Source: Octopus sinensis (taxonomy: Eukaryota). From it: a stretch of 64,000 bases of DNA. Location of the stretch: assembly GCF_006345805.1 (NCBI RefSeq), contig NC_043018.1, positions 26,226,001 to 26,290,000 on the forward strand, given 5' to 3'. The position numbers and the translations under genes are program-made. Below, piece after piece: positions 2,573-59,271 of this stretch; positions within the stretch are counted from its first letter, which is position 1; every line of letters starts with the position of its first letter. The notes under the pieces were generated by a model. That model did not search any database. It had not been told where the DNA came from and worked only from the letters and a program-made list of their open reading frames with translations.

Positions 2573-2587
2573 CCAGAAATTGGGAAG
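2573..2587 (+). CDS. unc-13: unc-13 15-nt microexon copy A, (A)RNWE(x), phase 1-1
   Basis: ttttctttttccctag|CCAGAAATTGGGAAG|gtattt. Paralogue at 13123 differs only at two synonymous positions; in frame with downstream exons. Confidence 0.7.
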
Positions 2588-3535
2588 GTATTTATTATTT
2601 TGTTCTTTATAAATATCTTGTTGTATTTTATGATGTACTTGCACATTGGTATGGGACTCGGTACCAATCAATGGATAGCTTGGGCTAACTTGTTGAAACG
2701 TCTGGTTGATATTAAAAAAAAATAATAATAAAAGAAAAAAAATTGGTAGCCTTTGATAGTATCAGCTTTTAAATTGTTTGTAGAACAAGAATTGAAATTT
2801 GCTTTTTAGATGTACAAAGTAGTCAGTTTACTTATGTAAGCAGAACAATTGAGAAACAGAGAAATCAATAGGATCATTTCTATTAATGTTACCAGTAACA
2901 TATTTTAATTAAACATGTTGCCTTGTTGCCTTATATGGCACTGCTTGGCCATTTGCATGTTTATATGGCAGCACTCGGCCACTCAATTTCACGAGCAGGT
3001 CATTCCATTGATCGCACCAACTGGAACGCTTGTCAAGTAACCGGTCAAGTGCCAGGCCATGGAGTGTACATTTTTTAAACTATCAACAAGAAGTTTAAAT
3101 TTCTCCATAGTCAGTGTATAATCACCTGCCCTCGTCAATCTGGCAAATAATGTTCTTCTTTTACAATTGACTTCATGGAAGGGCAATTTGTTGTGATATG
3201 ATTTGGAAATGTTACCGTTGCAGAAGCATGTAACTTTAATAACGCGAACAAACGACTATTTAATTGTTTGAAATTGACACAAGTGATTTCTATTCTCTTT
3301 TGTGTATTCAGTTTCAGATGACAATCCATTTGCAATTATTTTCTTTTCCATTTCATTTTTCTGCTGTCATGATCGAAAATAACTGTGACATATATATTAC
3401 AGATGTGTCAGTACAAAGACATGATGCAATGTTGATGTGTTACAACTAAGCAGAAAAACACATATTTTTCTTGTCTATGTATTTATCTGTATAAGTACAT
3501 ATACCTATACATATATGCGTGTGTGTGTGTGGTAT

Positions 3536-10959: not shown

Positions 10960-12255
10960 CATTCCCCTTCTCTCTTTCCTCTCCCTCCCTCTCTCTCCTC
11001 TCCCCCTCTCCCATCTACACCCTCTCTCTCTCCTCTCCCCTCCATGCCCTCTCCTCTCCATGCCCTCTCTCCCCTCTGTCTCTCTCTTCCCTCCCCTCTC
11101 TCCCCTTTCCTATACCCCACTCACCTTCTCTCACTTCTCCTCTTCTCTCCCTTCTCCCCTTCTTCCCCTCTCCCTTCTCCCATCCTTCCTCTCTCCTCTT
11201 GCCATCTTTCCTCTCTCTCCCGTCTCTCCTGTCTCCCGTCTCTCCTGTCTCCCTCTCCCATCTCTCCTGCCTCCCTCTCTCCCGTCTCTCCTTCTCCCTC
11301 TCTCCCGTCTCCCTCTCCCGTCTCTCCTGTCTCCCTCTCTCCCATCTCTCCTGTCTCCCTTCCCTCTCCTGTCTCCCTCTCCCTCTCTCCCGTCTCTCCT
11401 GTCTCCCTCTCTCCCATCTCTCCTGTCTCCCCCTCCCGTCTCTCCTGTCTCCCTCTCCCGTCTCTCCTGTCTCCCTCTCTCCCATCTCTCCTGTCTCCCT
11501 CTCTCCCATCTCTCCTGCCTCCCTCTCTCCCGTCTCTCTTTCTCCCTCTCTCCCGTCTCCCTCTCCCGTCTCTCCTGTCTCCCTCTCTCCCATCTCTCCT
11601 GTCTCCCGTCTCTCCTGTCTCCCTCTCCCTCTCTCCCGTCTCTCCTGTCTCCCTCTCTCCCATCTCTCCTGTCTCCCCCTCCCGTCTCTCCTGTCTCCCT
11701 CCTCCCCCTCCCTGTCTCTCCTGTCTCCCTCTCCCGTCTCTCCTGTCTCCCTCTCTCCCATCTCTCCTGTCTCCCTCTCTCCCATCTCTCCTGTCTCCCC
11801 CTCCCGTCTCTCCTGTCTCCCTCTCTCTCTCCCTCTCTCCTGTCTCCATCTCTCCTGTCTCCCTCTCTCCTGTCTCCCTCTCTCCTCTCTCCTGTCCCTG
11901 TCTCCCATCTCTCCTGTCTCCCTGTCTCCCGTCTCTCCTGTCTCCCTCTCCCTCTCTCCCGTCTCTCCTGTCTCCCTCTCTCCATCTCTCTCCTGTCTCC
12001 CTCTCTCCCATCTCTCCTGTCTCCCCCTCCCGTCTCTCCTGTCTCCCTCTCCCGTCTCTCCTGTCTCCCTCTCTCCCATCTCTCCTGTCTCCCTCTCTCC
12101 CATATCTCCTGTCTCCCCCCCCTCCCCCGTCTCCCTGTCTCCTCTCCCCATCTCTCCTGTCTCCCATCTCTCCTGTCTCCCTCTCTCCCATCTTCCCTGT
12201 CTCCCTCTCTCCTTTCCCCCTCTCTCACCCCTCCACTCATCTCCCCTCTCTCAAG
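10960..12255 (+). repeat. Pyrimidine-rich satellite, ~24-nt unit tctcctgtctccctctctcccatc
   Basis: The + strand is almost entirely C/T with isolated G/A; recurrent 20-30 nt units. Confidence 0.95.
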
Positions 12256-13122: not shown

Positions 13123-13137
13123 CCAGGAACTGGGAAG
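13123..13137 (+). CDS. unc-13: unc-13 15-nt microexon copy B, (A)RNWE(G), phase 1-1
   Basis: Long T/C tract ...cttttcatcctcag|CCAGGAACTGGGAAG|gtattt; AGG/AAC here versus AGA/AAT in copy A. Confidence 0.7.
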
Positions 13138-13304
13138 GTATTTATAATTTATTTATATTCTACGACATTAATTTTGTTAATTAAATAATTAATGTTTTAT
13201 AATTTTTTTTTTTTATAAATGCATTTTTATTATACTATAACTTTCTGGATATAGTCTATGTTTTATTACTATTATTATTATTATTATCATTATTATTATT
13301 ATTA

Positions 13305-52349: not shown

Positions 52350-52449
52350 NNNNNNNNNNNNNNNNNNNNNNNNNNNNNNNNNNNNNNNNNNNNNNNNNNN
52401 NNNNNNNNNNNNNNNNNNNNNNNNNNNNNNNNNNNNNNNNNNNNNNNNN
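52350..52449. other. Assembly gap (100 N; true size unknown)
   Basis: Run of n characters. Confidence 1.
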
Positions 52450-53241: not shown

Positions 53242-55680
53242 GTTAGAAATACTGTCTGTTTTTTTTTTTTGTTTTGTTTTTGGTAATTACTGGTGAGGAA
53301 AGATATAGTGATTATATAACAGTTTCGTTTATTTATTTGTTTATTTGTATATCTATTTATATATTTATTTTATTTTATTTTATTTTATTTTGTTCTTAAA
53401 TTATTCTGTAAAGGATTCTTTTTAAAAGTTTTAGGAAATTTACAATTTGAAAATAAAAATAAAAATATGTCTGAATAATTTAAATAACAAAAAAAAAATA
53501 GAAAGAAAAACAGAAGAACAGAATTAATCTTATTTAGTGAAAAATATCTTCAAAGAAATATTATTTTCAGGAAAATTAATTTTAGATTTTAGCACAACTG
53601 AACTACCATTCTCCACCGAGAAAATTCCTCTCTTTTGTAATTAATCTATTTGATTTCAAGATATTTATTCAACCATAAACAGAATGGCTATTTGCATTTT
53701 ATATATTCTGTATTCTATCAACACTTTGCGAAAAGTTAAGATTTTAATGTAGTTATTATTATTCATAATATTTGTTTCCAAGAAAGCAGTAGATTAAATT
53801 TCACAATTTCACAAAGACTTATCTAAAATGATATTAAGATTCCGTTATAAATCTTCTTACCTTGATTTTAGTCGAAACAATTGGTAATTTCTCCAAGACT
53901 CTTTTATCAGTATGAGCCATTCTTTATCGAACTAATATTTTGCAAAGCTAATTATTTCACTTGACTTCATGCTTACATTATCTTTGTATAAACAACGATG
54001 TTTTTTGCCATTAAAGTCTGTTCCATATGTTATATGAAGTACAATGCTTGAGGCTTAATTCTGAAATTATTCACTTATTAATTTTTATTTGTAAAATCTG
54101 GATTCTTTATTGTATATTAAGAACCTATAGATCGACTTATGTATACGGTGATTTTTATTATATACACTTAATTATTCATAAATCATTTTCTAGTATGGAT
54201 GAATTTTTAGTGTTTAAATCATTTAAAATTTTTTGATTCCTGCCAAACAATACATGCACACACACACACACACACACACTCTCTCTCTCTCTCTTCATTT
54301 CACGTTGCTCCAACTGATTCAGCTATAAATGGCTAAACCTGTTACAGACGAGCCTTCTGATCAGGAGGGATGTTGGCCTGCTTTGCCAGCAGACTGACAT
54401 CATTTGAAAGCTAAACTGATTCAAAGCACATTGTGACGAGTGATATACAACAACATGTGATAGTCTGGTCAGTCACATGATACACACGCACACACACACA
54501 CATGTATATATGAATATGAAGGTGCATGGTCTTGTGGTTTGGGTGTTGCATTCGTAATCACAAGACTGTGGTTTCGATTCCCAGTATGGTGGCATATTAT
54601 TTTTTCTTGAGCAAAATACTTCATTTCACATTGCACCAGTCCATTTGACTGTAAGGAAGTGCATTGTGACCAGTGATGTATAACACTGGAAATGCCTTTG
54701 GTAGACAGAAACTGAAAGAAACCCATCGTATATATATGGGTATGTGTATGTGTGTGTATCCTTGTATCTGTGTTTGTCTCCCACCACTGCTTGACACAGA
54801 ACACACAGCCAGGTCCAGGAATCGAAACCACAATCTTGTGATTGTGAGTACCCCACACTCTCACTACAAAGCCCCACGCTCCCACACATACACACACATA
54901 TATGCGTGTGTGTGTGTGTGGATCTCCAATTCAAAAGTTAAAATGATGCTGTTTATCTTTACTGTATTTCTTTATTGAAGTTTTCAAAATGGAAGGTAAT
55001 ACTTCGAATTCATTTAGCAGCGAAATTAATCACATTAAAATATTTTCTTGAATTAAAACATGAGACTGTGGCTGAAGCATTAATGCCTTTTACTTAGACT
55101 TGGTGTGTACATGTGCACACACGCACACAACACACACACACATCCATATGTATATACATATATATACACACCCACATCCATATGTATATATTATATACAC
55201 ACACACACTTCCATATGTATATATATATACATACACACATCCATATGTATATATATATATATATATATATAATACACACACACACTTCCATATGTATATA
55301 TATACACACACACATCAATATGTATATATACACATACACACATCCATATGTATACACATACACACATCCATATGTATACACACACACATCCATATGTATA
55401 TATACACACATAGTAGTCTTTTTGTTTCTATTGTTGGTATATTATTCTCTCTGATTTGCTTTATTATAACTGTTATAATTATTATTATTATTATTAGTTT
55501 GCTCATTTTCAAATTCATGATTAAAAGTTGCTTTTCCATATATGATTTGATTCTGTTGCATCCGGTTGCATTATTTTGAGCTATTAAAAAAAAGCGCTTA
55601 TTGTGTTTCAATGCATATTTTAGCAAAAATTCGAATTTGGATAAACACCATTTAATCACTTGCTCGTTATATTTTTGCAG

Positions 55681-55957
55681 CTGGTATGTCCGAAGATAGC
55701 GACTATACAAGTGATGTCAACTTCCCCGTGCAGCATCAACACAACAGCTCAGCCCATCAGTTTCGCGGAGACCATGGATTTCGAATGCAGCACAATGACA
55801 GCAAAGAGGATTTCGGGTCATTCGACCGCGGGTATGAACGTGAGCCCGATTATTATCAAGATGGGGTATATTACCCTGGTAGAAGTGATACTGATTCAGA
55901 ACCGCTCTACTATAATAGCAGACCAAATAGTAGACCACAATCTTTCATAAACGATAG
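55681..55957 (+). CDS. unc-13: unc-13 X-region exon (S)GMSEDSDYTSDVNFPVQHQHNSSAHQF...SRPQSFIND(R/S), phase 1-2
   Basis: atttttgcag|CTGGTATG...ACGATAG|gtatgt; 277 nt; carries the SEDSDYTSDV and NSSAHQ motifs of long UNC-13 isoforms. Confidence 0.93.
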
Positions 55958-56283
55958 GTATGTAATATATTGAGATATCAGTTTGTTATTATGCATGGAT
56001 ATTTGAGTGGGTTCCCAACTGTTGTTGGTTGGATTTTAAAGTTTTTTTTTTAGTTTCTATTTTTATTATTTTTTTGTATATGGTAGAAGTGATACTGATT
56101 CAGAACTGCTCTACTATAACAGCAGACCAAATAGTAGACCACAATCTTTCATAAACGATAGGTATGTAACGAATTGAAAATATTAGTTCGTTATTATGCA
56201 TGGATATTTGAGTGGGTTCCCAACTGTTGTTGGTTGGGTTTTGAAGTTTTTTTTAGTTTCTATTTTTATTATTTTTTTGTATT
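55877..56283 (+). repeat. 204-bp tandem duplication spanning the exon 3' end and intron start (plus a degenerate third fragment near 56360-56400)
   Basis: tggtagaagtgatactgattcagaa begins at 55877 and again at 56081. Confidence 0.95.
56087..56161 (+). CDS. Candidate duplication-born 75-nt cassette exon (R)SDTDSELLYYNSRPNSRPQSFIND, phase 2-2
   Basis: Second copy of a 204-bp tandem duplication: T-rich tract + TAG (56084-56086) acceptor and a copied GTATGT donor at 56162; in frame. Confidence 0.45.
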
Positions 56284-57242
56284 TGGTGCAGTGGATTAGC
56301 AGAATCATTAGTATTTGGACAAAATGCCATGAAAGATTTAGTTACATCATAAAATACCGATTTATTATTATGTATGGATATTTGAATGGATTTCCAGTTT
56401 TTGATGATTTCATTATTATTATTATTATTCTGTAGTTTTATTTTTATAGCGTGCTTTCACTTCACTACCGAGCGCAGCTCTGTGTGCCTTGCGTAGGTGC
56501 TGTGATTTGTTTTTTATTATTATTATTATCATTATTATTATTATTATTATTATAAATTTTTATTATTGTTATCCTTATCATCATCATCATCATCATTATT
56601 ATTGCTATGGTTGTGAGCTGGCAGAATCGTTATCGCGCCGGGCGAAATGCTTTGGCTGTATTTCTTCTGCCGCTATATTCTGAGTTCAAATTCTGCCGAG
56701 GTCAACTTTGCCTTTCATCCTTTTGGGGGACGATAAATTAAGGGTCAGTCAAGTACACAGTATTTATTTTTAGATTTTTATTTTTTTTTGAGTCTGGTAC
56801 TTATTCTATTGGTCTCTTATGCTGAACTGTTAAGTTATGGGACATGAATAAACCAATATCAGTTGTTGATCACAGTGGAGGGGGACAAACGCAGACTCAA
56901 ACATACACACACACACAGCACTAGCATAGCTAGAGTGTGTGCCACACCTGGAGCCCCAACAAAGGAAACATGCTGACTACAGCAGACCCAAAAGTGGTGC
57001 TGTCCCCATAAAAGTGCTGCCCACGGAAGACCACCACTCACTTTCCTCCCCCCACTTGCTATGTTAATGACACACAGTAACAATAGGCTTTCATACAGTT
57101 TCTGCCTATCAACTTCACTCACAAGCATCGGTCGTCCCAAAATGTCACATAGTAGGATTGAACCCGTAACCGTGTGATTATAAATGAAGCTTCTTAACCT
57201 CACAGCCATCCCTGCTCCTACATGTATGCATAGTAGGGTGGT

Positions 57243-57655
57243 GAGGTGGCAGACATGTTAGCGCGCCGGGCGAAATGCTGAGCAGTATTTTGTCTGTCAT
57301 TACGTTCTGAGTTCAAATTCCGCCAAGGTTGACTTTGCCTTTCATCCTTTCGGGGTCGATAAATAAAGTACCAGTTTCACACTGGGGTCAATATAATCAC
57401 CTTAATCCCTTTGTCTGTCCTTGTTTGTCCTCTCTGTGTTTAGCCCCTTGTGGGTAGTAAAGAAATAGGTATTTCGTCTGTCGTAATGTTCTGAGTTCAA
57501 ATTCTGCCGAGGTTGACTTTGCCTTTCCTCCTTTCGGGGTCGATAAATAGAGTACCAGTTTCGCACTGGGATCGATATAATCAACTTAATCCCTTTCTCT
57601 GTCCTTGTTTGTCCCCTCTATGTTTAGCCCATTGTGGGCAATATAGAAATATATA
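57243..57655 (+). mobile_element. Head-to-tail dimer of SINE family A
   Basis: A full copy followed directly by a 5'-truncated copy starting gtatttcgtctgtc at ~57468. Confidence 0.85.
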
Positions 57656-58074
57656 TGTATGCATAGAAGCGGGGGAGGGGGCTTCCTTCAGGCTGTTTGG
57701 TTTTGACTTTGACTGGGCTTTCAATTTCTCTCAAGGTCAATAAAGTAGTGAACAGTTGACAAAGTACGTCCGACCTCTGATGCAATGGTTTATATTAAAA
57801 AGGCTAAACTGTAAATAAAACGGATCCGAAGGAAGTTGTGCTTCTTTCTACAGATTTATAAACAGCAAACTGAAATTTTAAGTACTCCTCACATAGTTTA
57901 GATTGTTGAATGTCTTAATGGTCATTGCAAGAGAAGTTATTGATCTGTTTTATGCCATCGTTTCTCAATCAATAAAACATGTACGTACTTCACTTATTTA
58001 AACGAACTAAAATATGCACTTCTAATGACCTTTGGGTTGGCATTTTACAATGAGTAATACTAAACTTTCGAAAT

Positions 58075-58528
58075 ATATGTGTGTGTTTGTGTGTGCATGT
58101 GCGCATGTGTCTATATATATATGTACACACTTGTATACATGCGTACACATACATGCATTATATTTATGTGTTTATGTGTGTATATATATATGTGTGTGTA
58201 TGTATTTGTGTGTGTGTGCATATGTGCATTTCTATATATACGTACACACTTGTATATATGCGTACACATACATGCATTATATTTACGTGTTTATATATAT
58301 ATATATATATATATGTATTTGTGTGTGTGTGTGTGCATTTCTATATATATGTACACTCTCTTATATACATGTGTACACATACATGCACTATATTTATGTG
58401 TTTATATGTGTATATATATATATATATGTATGTATTTGTGTGTGTGTGTGTGTGCATTTCTATATAAATGTACACACTTATATACATGCGTACATATACA
58501 TGCATTATAGTGTTTTATATATTGTGTG

Positions 58529-58575
<47 letters not shown>

Positions 58576-58760
58576 ATATGTGTTAGTAATACCAGCAATT
58601 ATAATTATTTTTATTTTATCGCAATTTGATTTGTTTATATATATATATATATATATGTATTTGTGTGTGTGAGTGTGTGTGCATTTCTATATATATGTAC
58701 ACACTTATATACATGTGTATACATACAAGCATTATATTTTTGTGTGTGTATATGTATTTA
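58075..58760. repeat. Microsatellite-derived ~120-bp tandem repeat (about five units)
   Basis: gtgcatttctatatatatgtacacact ... catacatgcattatat recurs. Confidence 0.85.
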
Positions 58761-59211: not shown

Positions 59212-59271
59212 TCCTGTTGACAGCCATGTTTCTTCCTTGAATGTAAGCAGACAAAGCACACAAGACTACAG
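59212..59271 (+). CDS. unc-13: unc-13 60-nt exon (S)PVDSHVSSLNVSRQSTQDY(R/S), phase 2-2
   Basis: cttatctttctctcccaacag|TCCTGT...CTACAG|gtaagt; strong sites, open in the phase left by 55957. Confidence 0.75.

What the first reader, a model, noticed from the sequence alone, without database searches (positions are those of the whole stretch)
55877..56283. Exon birth in progress: a 204-bp tandem duplication assembles a new in-frame 75-nt exon
Seen: the last 81 nt of the X-region exon plus ~123 nt of intron are duplicated, with tggt microhomology at the breakpoint. The junction places the intron's T-rich tail directly before the exonic TAG of GGT AGA, creating a 3' splice site (56085-56086), and the GTATGT donor is copied (56162). 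The resulting 129-nt intron and 75-nt phase 2-2 exon regenerate Arg at the junction and repeat RSDTDSE(P>L)LYYNSRPNSRPQSFIND. An alternative AG at 56052-56053 also keeps frame (108 nt). The copies differ at 2 of 75 exonic sites and about nine intronic sites, so this is not a simple assembly echo. A degenerate third fragment near 56360-56400 suggests repeated duplication. Inference: a recent de novo cassette duplicating a Ser/Tyr/Arg-rich motif, the same process that may have produced the older twin microexons.
Basis: partly seen in the sequence, partly recalled or inferred. Interest (0 to 1): 0.85.

Follow-up and report, generated by a model that had tools for sequence, protein, structure and literature searches.

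The report
Duplicated exon end in octopus Munc13
A 204-base stretch spanning the end of one exon and the start of the next intron of the octopus synaptic gene unc-13 (Munc13) has been copied in tandem, leaving a spare, in-frame, splice-ready "proto-exon" that all available gene models skip and that shows no sign of being under selection.

Summary
A 204-bp head-to-tail duplication lies at 55877-56283 (about 93% identical) with TGGT microhomology at the breakpoints. It copies the last 81 nt of a 277-nt exon plus about 123 nt of intron. An older, decayed third copy of the intron part follows.

The gene is an Octopus unc-13/Munc13 orthologue: its exons are identical to O. sinensis XP_036368007.1, and its N-terminus matches the Munc13-1 C2A structure. 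The copied peptide is the most conserved block of this linker exon.

On paper, copy 2 can be spliced in frame as a 75-, 72- or 108-nt exon.

The claim that the new exon is being born is not shown:
- The RefSeq model and two O. bimaculoides proteins join SFIND directly to SPVDS.
- None of the credible motif-bearing proteins among 1.84 billion representatives carries the motif twice.
- The junction acceptor has a poorer pyrimidine tract than the gene's real acceptors, and a stronger AG lies 33 nt upstream.
- Both exonic changes are derived in copy 2, at the intronic rate, and one replaces a conserved Pro.

Best reading: a real microhomology-mediated duplication whose second copy is a mostly skipped intronic pseudo-exon. 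It is a known kind of event, and its use needs RNA-seq to settle.

The parts
55681..55957 (+). Parent exon ('exon X', 277 nt) of the unc-13/Munc13 orthologue. It encodes (T)GMSEDSDYTSDVNFPV...GRSDTDSEPLYYNSRPNSRPQSFIND and ends in phase 2 (GAT AG|gt).
   Evidence: The tblastn match to P0016 (XP_036368007.1) is identical across the exon.
55877..56080 (+). Copy 1 of the 204-bp unit: the last 81 nt of exon X plus the first 123 nt of the intron.
   Evidence: TRF; alignments.
56081..56283 (+). Copy 2 of the unit (203 nt after small indels). It lies wholly inside the annotated intron.
   Evidence: TRF; alignments.
56081..56084 (+). Junction TGGT. The same four bases are at 55877-55880 and 56284-56287, giving 4-nt breakpoint microhomology.
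   Evidence: Sequence; three-way alignment.
55958..56086 (+). Candidate new 129-nt intron, running from the original donor GT at 55958 to the junction AG at 56085-56086. It contains a stronger decoy acceptor, T10-AG, at 56052-56053.
   Evidence: AG positions within it are 55973, 55980, 56006, 56040, 56052, 56085 and 56088.
56087..56161 (+). Candidate 75-nt phase 2-2 proto-exon encoding (R)SDTDSELLYYNSRPNSRPQSFIND. Alternative starts at 56090 (72 nt, from the NAGNAG-type TAGAAG) and 56054 (108 nt, adding SFYFYYFFVYG) are also in frame.
   Evidence: Translations of all isoforms.
56162..56169 (+). Copied 5' splice site GTATGTAA. Through intron position +8 it is identical to the constitutive donor at 55958, and the exon side carries only the two substitutions at 56107 and 56120.
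56107..56120 (+). The two diagnostic copy-2 substitutions: 56107 T (CCG to CTG, Pro to Leu, a CpG transition) and 56120 C (AAT to AAC, synonymous). Both are derived relative to the outgroup.
   Evidence: Polarisation with the distant cephalopod contig L001.
56354..56447 (+). Older, decayed third copy of the intron segment only (about 70% identity).
   Evidence: the repeat finder family D4; motif search; shuffle test z = 9.8.
59212..59271 (+). Next constitutive exon (60 nt, phase 2-2, SPVDSHVSSLNVSRQSTQDY). It is the acceptor used by the annotated mRNA directly from donor 55958.
   Evidence: tblastn; boundary context; the join SFIND|SPVDS in P0001, P0016 and P0017.

Best explanation
This is a real 204-bp tandem duplication, mediated by microhomology, that straddles the 3' end of a linker exon and the start of the following intron in an Octopus unc-13/Munc13 gene. 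It is not very recent. A template slip or microhomology-mediated repair between two TGGT tetramers, one in the exon and one 204 nt downstream in the intron, copied the exon's last 81 nt, its donor site and 123 nt of intron.

The original donor at 55958 still pairs with the acceptor at 59212, so copy 2 sits inside the intron and is normally removed with it. The duplication is therefore close to neutral. Copy 2 is best described as a splice-competent pseudo-exon or proto-exon. It has a perfect copied donor and two or three in-frame candidate acceptors, but it is predominantly skipped and evolves without detectable constraint.

Any use of the copied donor stays in frame only if the 96-129-nt mini-intron is also removed. 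Otherwise the transcript hits a stop codon (RYVIY*). What is shown: the anatomy, the gene identity, the skipping in all available protein models, and the neutral-like substitution pattern. What is inferred: the mutational mechanism, the predominance of skipping in vivo, and the age.
For: Duplication and microhomology. Gene identity: every exon in the window is identical to XP_036368007.1, named 'unc-13 homolog B-like', and its N-terminus matches the Munc13-1 C2A structure 2CJS at E = 1.4e-28. Skipping: P0016, P0001 and P0017 all read SFIND|SPVDS. The first search returned only 15 proteins, none with a second copy. All credible hits in the 1.84-billion-protein profile search carry a single motif. 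Acceptor quality: the junction AG has 4 of 9 pyrimidines at -12..-4, against 6-8 of 9 for five real acceptors, and the upstream T10-AG has 9 of 9. No constraint on copy 2: both exonic changes are derived in copy 2, 2 observed against 2.8 expected at the intronic per-copy rate, while the real exon has 0 (Poisson P = 0.06). Pro to Leu hits a residue conserved in 11 of 13 orthologues. A distant cephalopod has a single copy followed by about 960 nt of intron, so the duplication is derived. Against an assembly artefact: the copies differ by 11 substitutions plus indels, the nearest N-gap is 3.4 kb away, and a decayed third copy shows a local history of duplication. A transcript that retains the 129 nt hits a stop codon.
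Against: No RNA-seq or Iso-Seq reads could be examined, so skipping rests on three gene models from two species. One of those species may lack the duplication altogether. The copied donor is identical to a constitutive one, and copy 2 carries the same exonic sequence that supports recognition of exon X, so some inclusion is plausible. The substitution counts are tiny (2 against 0), and the exon-versus-intron difference is not significant (Fisher P = 0.21). Copy 2 keeps an open frame and intact AG and GT signals, although with about 2.8 expected neutral changes that is unremarkable. Presence in a second assembly or in raw reads could not be checked.
Confidence: 0.6

Rival explanations
1. One reading: copy 2 is already a working, alternatively spliced cassette exon of 75 nt (or 72 or 108 nt). 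When included, it adds a second copy of the conserved RSDTDSE-LYYNSRPNSRPQSF motif to the Munc13 linker between the C2A domain and the calmodulin-binding region. Inclusion may be confined to some neurons or stages.
For: All three inclusion isoforms are in frame, and the junction regenerates Arg. The donor is identical to a constitutive donor. A T-rich tract and a plausible branch site (TTTTTAT, A at 56065, 21 nt upstream of the AG; read from the sequence) precede the junction AG. The linker already holds older duplicated exons that are used. The duplicated peptide is the best-conserved block of the exon, and the region is a low-complexity linker where an extra 25 residues should be tolerated.
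Against: No annotated or predicted protein includes copy 2. The junction acceptor is weak, and a stronger AG upstream would add an odd aromatic stretch, SFYFYYFFVYG. Copy 2 accumulates changes at the intronic rate, including Pro to Leu at a conserved site.
Confidence: 0.27
2. Assembly artefact or individual-specific variant: the tandem copy comes from a haplotype mis-join, gap-filling or polishing, or it is a heterozygous structural polymorphism of the sequenced animal and not a species feature.
For: The assembly is scaffolded, with a 100-N gap at 52350-52449. Two of the indels between the copies lie in T homopolymers, a typical long-read error. I could not obtain a second Octopus assembly or any reads.
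Against: The copies differ by 11 substitutions in about 200 nt (about 5.5%), which by my judgement is far above plausible heterozygosity or residual error. The junction is clean, carries 4-nt microhomology and is 3.4 kb from the gap. If the two copies were alleles, a Pro/Leu polymorphism would sit inside a nearly invariant motif. The older third fragment shows that this site has duplicated before.
Confidence: 0.08
3. The copied donor acts mainly as a regulatory or decoy element. U1 bound at 56162 would compete with or reinforce the real donor, and products that use it without removing the mini-intron would be destroyed by nonsense-mediated decay. The duplication would then tune unc-13 mRNA output without adding protein sequence.
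For: The two donors are identical and 204 nt apart. Use of donor 2 with the 129 nt retained gives an in-frame stop, RYVIY*. From general knowledge, duplicated strong 5' splice sites compete with one another.
Against: Nothing here points specifically to regulation. There is no unusual RNA structure around the unit (z = -1.1) and no sign of conservation of copy 2.
Confidence: 0.05

Closest known systems
Tandem exon duplication as a source of new or alternative exons (Kondrashov & Koonin 2001 and Letunic et al. 2002, from my own knowledge; bioRxiv 10.1101/009282 describes the class as 'thoroughly studied')
   Same: A local head-to-tail duplication within a gene yields a second homologous exon copy with compatible phase. 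The same gene holds older examples that are used (15-nt and 60-nt twin exons).
   Different: Only the last 81 nt of the exon was copied, not a whole exon with both flanks. The copy therefore has no inherited acceptor and depends on an AG created at the junction or on an intronic decoy AG. Use in mRNA is not shown.
Intron or splice-site creation by internal tandem genomic duplication (Rogers 1989; Gao & Lynch 2009; Hellsten et al. 2011; reviewed in PMC3443670; potato RdRp case PMC4974935)
   Same: A tandem duplication of a segment containing AG|GT gives a duplicated splice site. The review describes 'imprecise' outcomes that use latent sites inside the duplicate and add coding nucleotides, which is what the 75/108-nt inclusion would be.
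   Different: In the classic case the duplicate lies inside an exon and must be spliced out to preserve the mRNA. Here the duplicate already lies in an intron downstream of an intact donor, so the gene needs nothing new and the new 129-nt intron is optional.
Microhomology-mediated tandem duplication (replication slippage, MMEJ or FoSTeS-type events)
   Same: The copies abut head to tail with no filler, there is 4-nt microhomology (TGGT) at both breakpoints, and no transposon or target-site duplication is present.
   Different: The mechanism is inferred from the scar alone. Four bases is short, and the pathway cannot be determined from sequence.
Intronic pseudo-exons or decoy exons
   Same: An intronic segment with good-looking splice sites and an open frame that the spliceosome normally ignores.
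   Different: Most pseudo-exons are chance sequences or derive from transposons. This one is a near-exact copy of a constitutive exon end, so its donor and exonic context are proven functional elsewhere.

Membership tests
unc-13 / Munc13 gene | N-terminal C2A domain homologous to Munc13-1 C2A | tested here: met
   P0016 residues 1-99 match chain 2CJS_A (UNC-13 homolog A) at E = 1.4e-28. Pfam gave no hit because the model starts mid-domain. The C2A-coding exons lie outside the window.
unc-13 / Munc13 gene | The window's exons belong to that gene | tested here: met
   Five exons in the window translate identically to XP_036368007.1. The source's own name for it is 'protein unc-13 homolog B-like'.
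unc-13 / Munc13 gene | C1, C2B, MUN and C2C domains downstream | not tested
   These lie outside the 64-kb window and outside the 388-aa partial model.
Tandem exon duplication giving a used exon | Two adjacent homologous exon copies, same strand, same gene | tested here: met
Tandem exon duplication giving a used exon | Reading-frame compatibility of the new copy | tested here: met
   The 75-, 72- and 108-nt versions are all in frame with no stop.
Tandem exon duplication giving a used exon | Competent splice sites on both sides of the new copy | tested here: inconclusive
   The donor is identical to a constitutive donor. The junction acceptor has a poorer pyrimidine tract (4 of 9) than real acceptors (6-8 of 9), and a competing AG lies upstream. 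No calibrated splice-site scoring model was available.
Tandem exon duplication giving a used exon | The new copy is present in mature transcripts or proteins | tested here: not met
   All three available Octopus proteins skip it. No protein in two very large searches carries the motif twice. Raw RNA-seq was not testable with these tools.
Tandem exon duplication giving a used exon | Purifying selection on the new copy | tested here: not met
   There are 2 derived changes in 75 nt against 2.8 expected under neutrality. One is nonsynonymous at a conserved Pro. Power is low.
Microhomology-mediated tandem duplication | Head-to-tail copies with short microhomology at the breakpoints and no mobile-element hallmarks | tested here: met
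   TGGT occurs at 55877, 56081 and 56284 with diverging flanks. The intron motif is not dispersed. The spacer is not significantly SINE-like.
Assembly artefact (haplotype echo) | Copies differ only at the level of heterozygosity or error, and the duplication abuts a gap or contig end | tested here: not met
   Substitution divergence is about 5.5%. The nearest N-run is 3.4 kb upstream.

The most novel reading that the evidence does not exclude
Copy 2 is a lineage-specific, neuron-regulated cassette exon in the Octopus vulgaris/sinensis group. When included, it doubles a short linear motif that is nearly invariant across the orthologues found here (RSDTDSEPLYYNSRPNSRPQSF), in the Munc13 linker between the RIM-binding C2A domain and the calmodulin-binding region. 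That would make it a datable case of a new coding exon in a core synaptic-vesicle priming protein, born from a partial-exon duplication with an acceptor created at the junction.
Probability: 0.15. Interest if true: 0.55.

Novelty: new member of a known kind. Interest (0 to 1): 0.3.

Why it matters
If copy 2 is spliced in, this would be a clean and unusually legible example of how a coding exon originates. The mutational scar (TGGT), the inherited donor, the junction-made acceptor and the parent exon are all still readable, and the gene is central to synaptic transmission in an animal studied for its nervous system. It would also give a handle on an uncharacterised conserved motif in the Munc13 N-terminal linker. 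If copy 2 is skipped, as the evidence favours, it is an ordinary near-neutral intronic duplication. It would then matter mainly as an annotation caveat, because reads from the two 97%-identical exon ends can be mis-assigned, and as one data point on how often splice-competent proto-exons sit unused.

Tried and rejected
1. Other Octopus genomes. The look-up of encoding contigs failed for P0016 (the 228-kb gene range is too long, so no DNA was returned), P0001, P0017 and the window's own read-through ORF. A metagenome scan with a 22-mer shared by both copies found nothing. The duplication therefore could not be dated across species or confirmed in a second assembly.

2. The idea that the 69-nt spacer before the third fragment (56285-56353) is a decayed exon tail or a CpG-decayed SINE head. 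Neither alignment beats shuffles (z = 1.3 and 1.1), so I dropped both.

3. The idea that the intron segment is a dispersed repeat. Its motif occurs only at the three local sites.

4. Structured or non-coding RNA. All Rfam hits are below their gathering scores and lie on TA/CA low-complexity sequence. There are no tRNAs. The fold of 55940-56180 is unremarkable (z = -1.1).

5. Recursive splicing. Joining exon X to either junction AG does not rebuild a GT donor (read from the sequence), so I rejected it.

6. Pfam on the exon and on P0016 gave no family. The family assignment came from the solved-structure search instead.

7. Multi-stretch hits in the profile search (P0039 and similar rows) match only the NSRP-like low-complexity part of the profile. 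P0039, the one I read, is an unrelated repetitive ORF, and none of them is a double motif.

8. The Gao & Lynch 2009 paper could not be opened. I cite it only through the review PMC3443670 and from my own knowledge.

Full report
**What is in the sequence.** Tandem Repeats Finder reports one array at 55877-56287 with period 204, 2.0 copies, 93% matches and score 720. The repeat finder gives the same pair, plus a three-member family for the intron-derived part. Copy 1 is 55877-56080 and copy 2 is 56081-56283.

A gapped alignment shows 2 differences in the 75 exonic positions and 9 mismatches plus 4 gap columns in the intron part. The tetramer TGGT stands at the start of copy 1, at the start of copy 2 and immediately after copy 2 (56284). 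The bases on either side of it differ, so the breakpoints share a 4-nt microhomology.
- The parent exon ends at 55957, with GT at 55958.
- The junction AG is at 56085-56086.
- The copied GTATGT starts at 56162.
- The candidate intron is 129 nt.
- The candidate exon is 75 nt (56087-56161), phase 2-2.

**Which gene.** The exon translates to (T)GMSEDSDYTSDVNFPV...GRSDTDSEPLYYNSRPNSRPQSFIND. A protein search returned 15 hits. The cluster of the best hit contains XP_036368007.1, named 'protein unc-13 homolog B-like' in Octopus sinensis, and two O. bimaculoides entries.

Five exons of that 388-aa protein map to the window with identical translation, at about 26.2, 30.9, 37.6, 55.7 and 59.2 kb. The window is therefore O. 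sinensis or a very close relative.

The protein's N-terminus matches the solved Munc13-1 C2A domain (2CJS) at E = 1.4e-28. Its C-terminal end (ARNRWIDAIQKV...) resembles the Munc13 calmodulin-binding region; that resemblance is from my memory and was not tested. The duplicated exon therefore lies in the low-complexity linker that follows C2A.

**What was duplicated, in protein terms.** An alignment of 13 orthologous exon translations shows two nearly invariant blocks separated by a variable, expandable middle. The blocks are MSEDSDYTSDxNYP...HQHNxSAHQF at the start and RSDTDSEPLYYNSRPNSRPQSFxxD at the end. The duplication copied exactly the second block. The exon boundary (D, then AG|GT) is conserved in all of them.

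**Could copy 2 be spliced?** On paper, yes. I translated the alternatives:
- Skipping gives ...SFIND-SPVDS..., which is the annotated form.
- The junction AG gives ...SFIND-RSDTDSELLYYNSRPNSRPQSFIND-SPVDS... (75 nt).
- The junction sequence is TAGAAG, a NAGNAG-type tandem acceptor. The second AG (56088-89) gives a 72-nt version without the Arg.
- The AG at 56052-53 gives a 108-nt version that adds SFYFYYFFVYG.
- Using the copied donor without removing the mini-intron runs into RYVIY-stop.

The copied donor is identical to the constitutive one through position +8. The acceptor is the weak point. At -12..-4 the junction AG has 4 of 9 pyrimidines, against 6-8 of 9 for the gene's five real acceptors in the window. 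The tract is separated from the AG by GTATATGG. The T10-AG acceptor 33 nt upstream scores 9 of 9. A branch-site-like TTTTTAT (A at 56065) lies 21 nt upstream of the junction AG, so its use is conceivable. I had no calibrated splice-site model, so this part stays qualitative.

**Is copy 2 used?** I could not examine reads. The indirect evidence is negative:
- The O. sinensis RefSeq protein and both O. bimaculoides proteins join SFIND directly to SPVDS.
- Any protein containing the second copy would share many 5-residue words with my first query. Only 15 candidates exist and none has it.
- A motif-only profile searched against 1.84 billion representative proteins found 39 hits. All credible ones carry the motif once, including spliced mollusc unc-13 fragments such as P0025, P0030, P0031 and P0036. 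The multi-stretch rows match only the NSRP-like low-complexity part of the profile, and P0039, the one I read, is an unrelated repetitive ORF.

**Is copy 2 under selection?** A distant cephalopod contig (L001, about 75% nucleotide identity in the exon) served as outgroup. Both exonic differences are derived in copy 2. One is CCG to CTG (Pro to Leu, a CpG transition) and the other is a synonymous AAT to AAC.

The intron parts differ at 9 of 121 aligned sites, or about 3.7% per copy. That predicts 2.8 neutral changes in 75 nt. Copy 2 has 2, while the real exon has 0 (Poisson P = 0.06). The changed Pro is conserved in 11 of 13 orthologues. Copy 2 therefore behaves like intron and copy 1 like a constrained exon. 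The numbers are small, and the direct exon-versus-intron contrast is not significant (Fisher P = 0.21).

**History and age.** The distant cephalopod has one copy followed by about 960 nt of unrelated intron, so the duplication is derived within the octopus lineage.

A third fragment at 56354-56447 is significantly homologous to the intron part (z = 9.8). The 69 nt before it are not recognisably exon tail or SINE (z about 1). The motif is not dispersed in the window. The site therefore duplicated at least twice.

Published dates are about 2.5 My for O. vulgaris versus O. sinensis and about 34 My for O. bimaculoides versus that pair (PMC10700109). A divergence of 5-7% between the copies very probably predates the 2.5-My split. 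It could approach the older one if nuclear rates are near 1e-9 per site per year. That rate is my assumption, not a measurement. I could not reach any other Octopus genome to test this.

**Artefact?** This is unlikely. The copies differ by 11 substitutions, the junction is clean with microhomology, the nearest scaffold gap (52350-52449) is 3.4 kb away, and an older decayed copy sits alongside. Two indels in T-homopolymers could be sequencing error. Only reads or PCR can close this question.

**How it most likely works.** A slip or microhomology-mediated repair between the exonic and intronic TGGT copied 204 bp (inferred from the scar). The original donor is intact and still pairs with the acceptor at 59212, so the extra copy is removed as part of the intron and the event is nearly neutral (supported by the gene models). 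The copy is a proto-exon: all three ways of splicing it in keep the frame, and only retention of the mini-intron is disruptive. I put about 0.6 on 'real duplication, predominantly skipped', about 0.27 on 'working cassette', about 0.08 on artefact or private variant, and about 0.05 on a mainly regulatory decoy-donor role.

**Comparison with what is known.** Exon origin by intragenic tandem duplication is an established class. A survey of new mammalian exons sets it aside as 'thoroughly studied' (10.1101/009282). Creation of splice sites and introns by internal tandem duplication, including 'imprecise' cases that use latent sites inside the duplicate and add coding sequence, is reviewed in PMC3443670.

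This case differs in one respect. Only part of the exon was copied together with intron, so the donor is inherited but the acceptor must come from the junction or from an intronic decoy.

The same linker holds older duplicated exons that are used. The twin 15-nt microexons lie at about 2574 and 13124 and encode WEARN-WEARN. The twin 60-nt SPV...SRQSTQDY exons are also present in other molluscs. It does not show that this particular copy is in use.

**Verdict.** This is a new member of a known kind, of modest interest unless RNA data show inclusion.

Noticed in passing
window 2574-2588 and 13124-13138 (+): Twin 15-nt microexons, CCAGAAATTGGGAAG and CCAGGAACTGGGAAG. Both are flanked by ...ag| and |gtatttat, and both are present in the RefSeq protein as WEARNWEARNWEG. 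This is an older exon duplication, about 10.5 kb apart, in the same gene. Flank similarity is limited to a few tens of bases.
   Followed up: partly
window 59212-59271 (+) and P0016 residues 278-338: The 60-nt exon SPVDSHVSSLNVSRQSTQDY has a twin (SPVNSRISSADVSRQSTQDY) further downstream in the protein, outside the window. Similar twins occur in other mollusc unc-13 fragments (P0025, P0030), so that duplication is ancient and both copies are used.
   Followed up: partly
window 55681-55957 (+): The linker exon has two nearly invariant blocks across 13 orthologues, MSEDSDYTSDxNYP..HQHNxSAHQF and RSDTDSEPLYYNSRPNSRPQSFxxD. Between them lies a highly variable D/R/Y/S-rich middle that ranges from about 30 to more than 300 residues. 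No Pfam family covers it, and I know of no described function for these motifs.
   Followed up: partly
window 52350-52449: A run of 100 N (scaffold gap) inside a TA/CA microsatellite-rich stretch, 3.2 kb upstream of the exon.
   Followed up: yes
window 11067-12244: A CT-rich minisatellite of about 1.2 kb (period 22/24/46, about 22-52 copies). It accounts for the local GC of 0.52 and GC skew of -0.6.
   Followed up: partly
window 56606-56728, 57234-57355, 57285-57651 and seven other sites: A dispersed SINE-like element with a tRNA-like core (GTTCTGAGTTCAAATTCCGCCGAGGT) occurs 10 times on both strands in the window. Three copies lie just downstream of the duplication, including a 184-bp tandem pair at 57285-57651.
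   Followed up: partly
window 56085-56089 (+): The duplication junction reads TAGAAG, a NAGNAG-type tandem acceptor. If it is ever used, it would give products that differ by a single Arg codon.
   Followed up: partly
window 55100-55420 and 58030-58760: Long TA/CA-rich imperfect microsatellites flank the exon region. They produce many sub-threshold Rfam miRNA-family matches (mir-297, mir-466 and others), which are low-complexity artefacts.
   Followed up: yes
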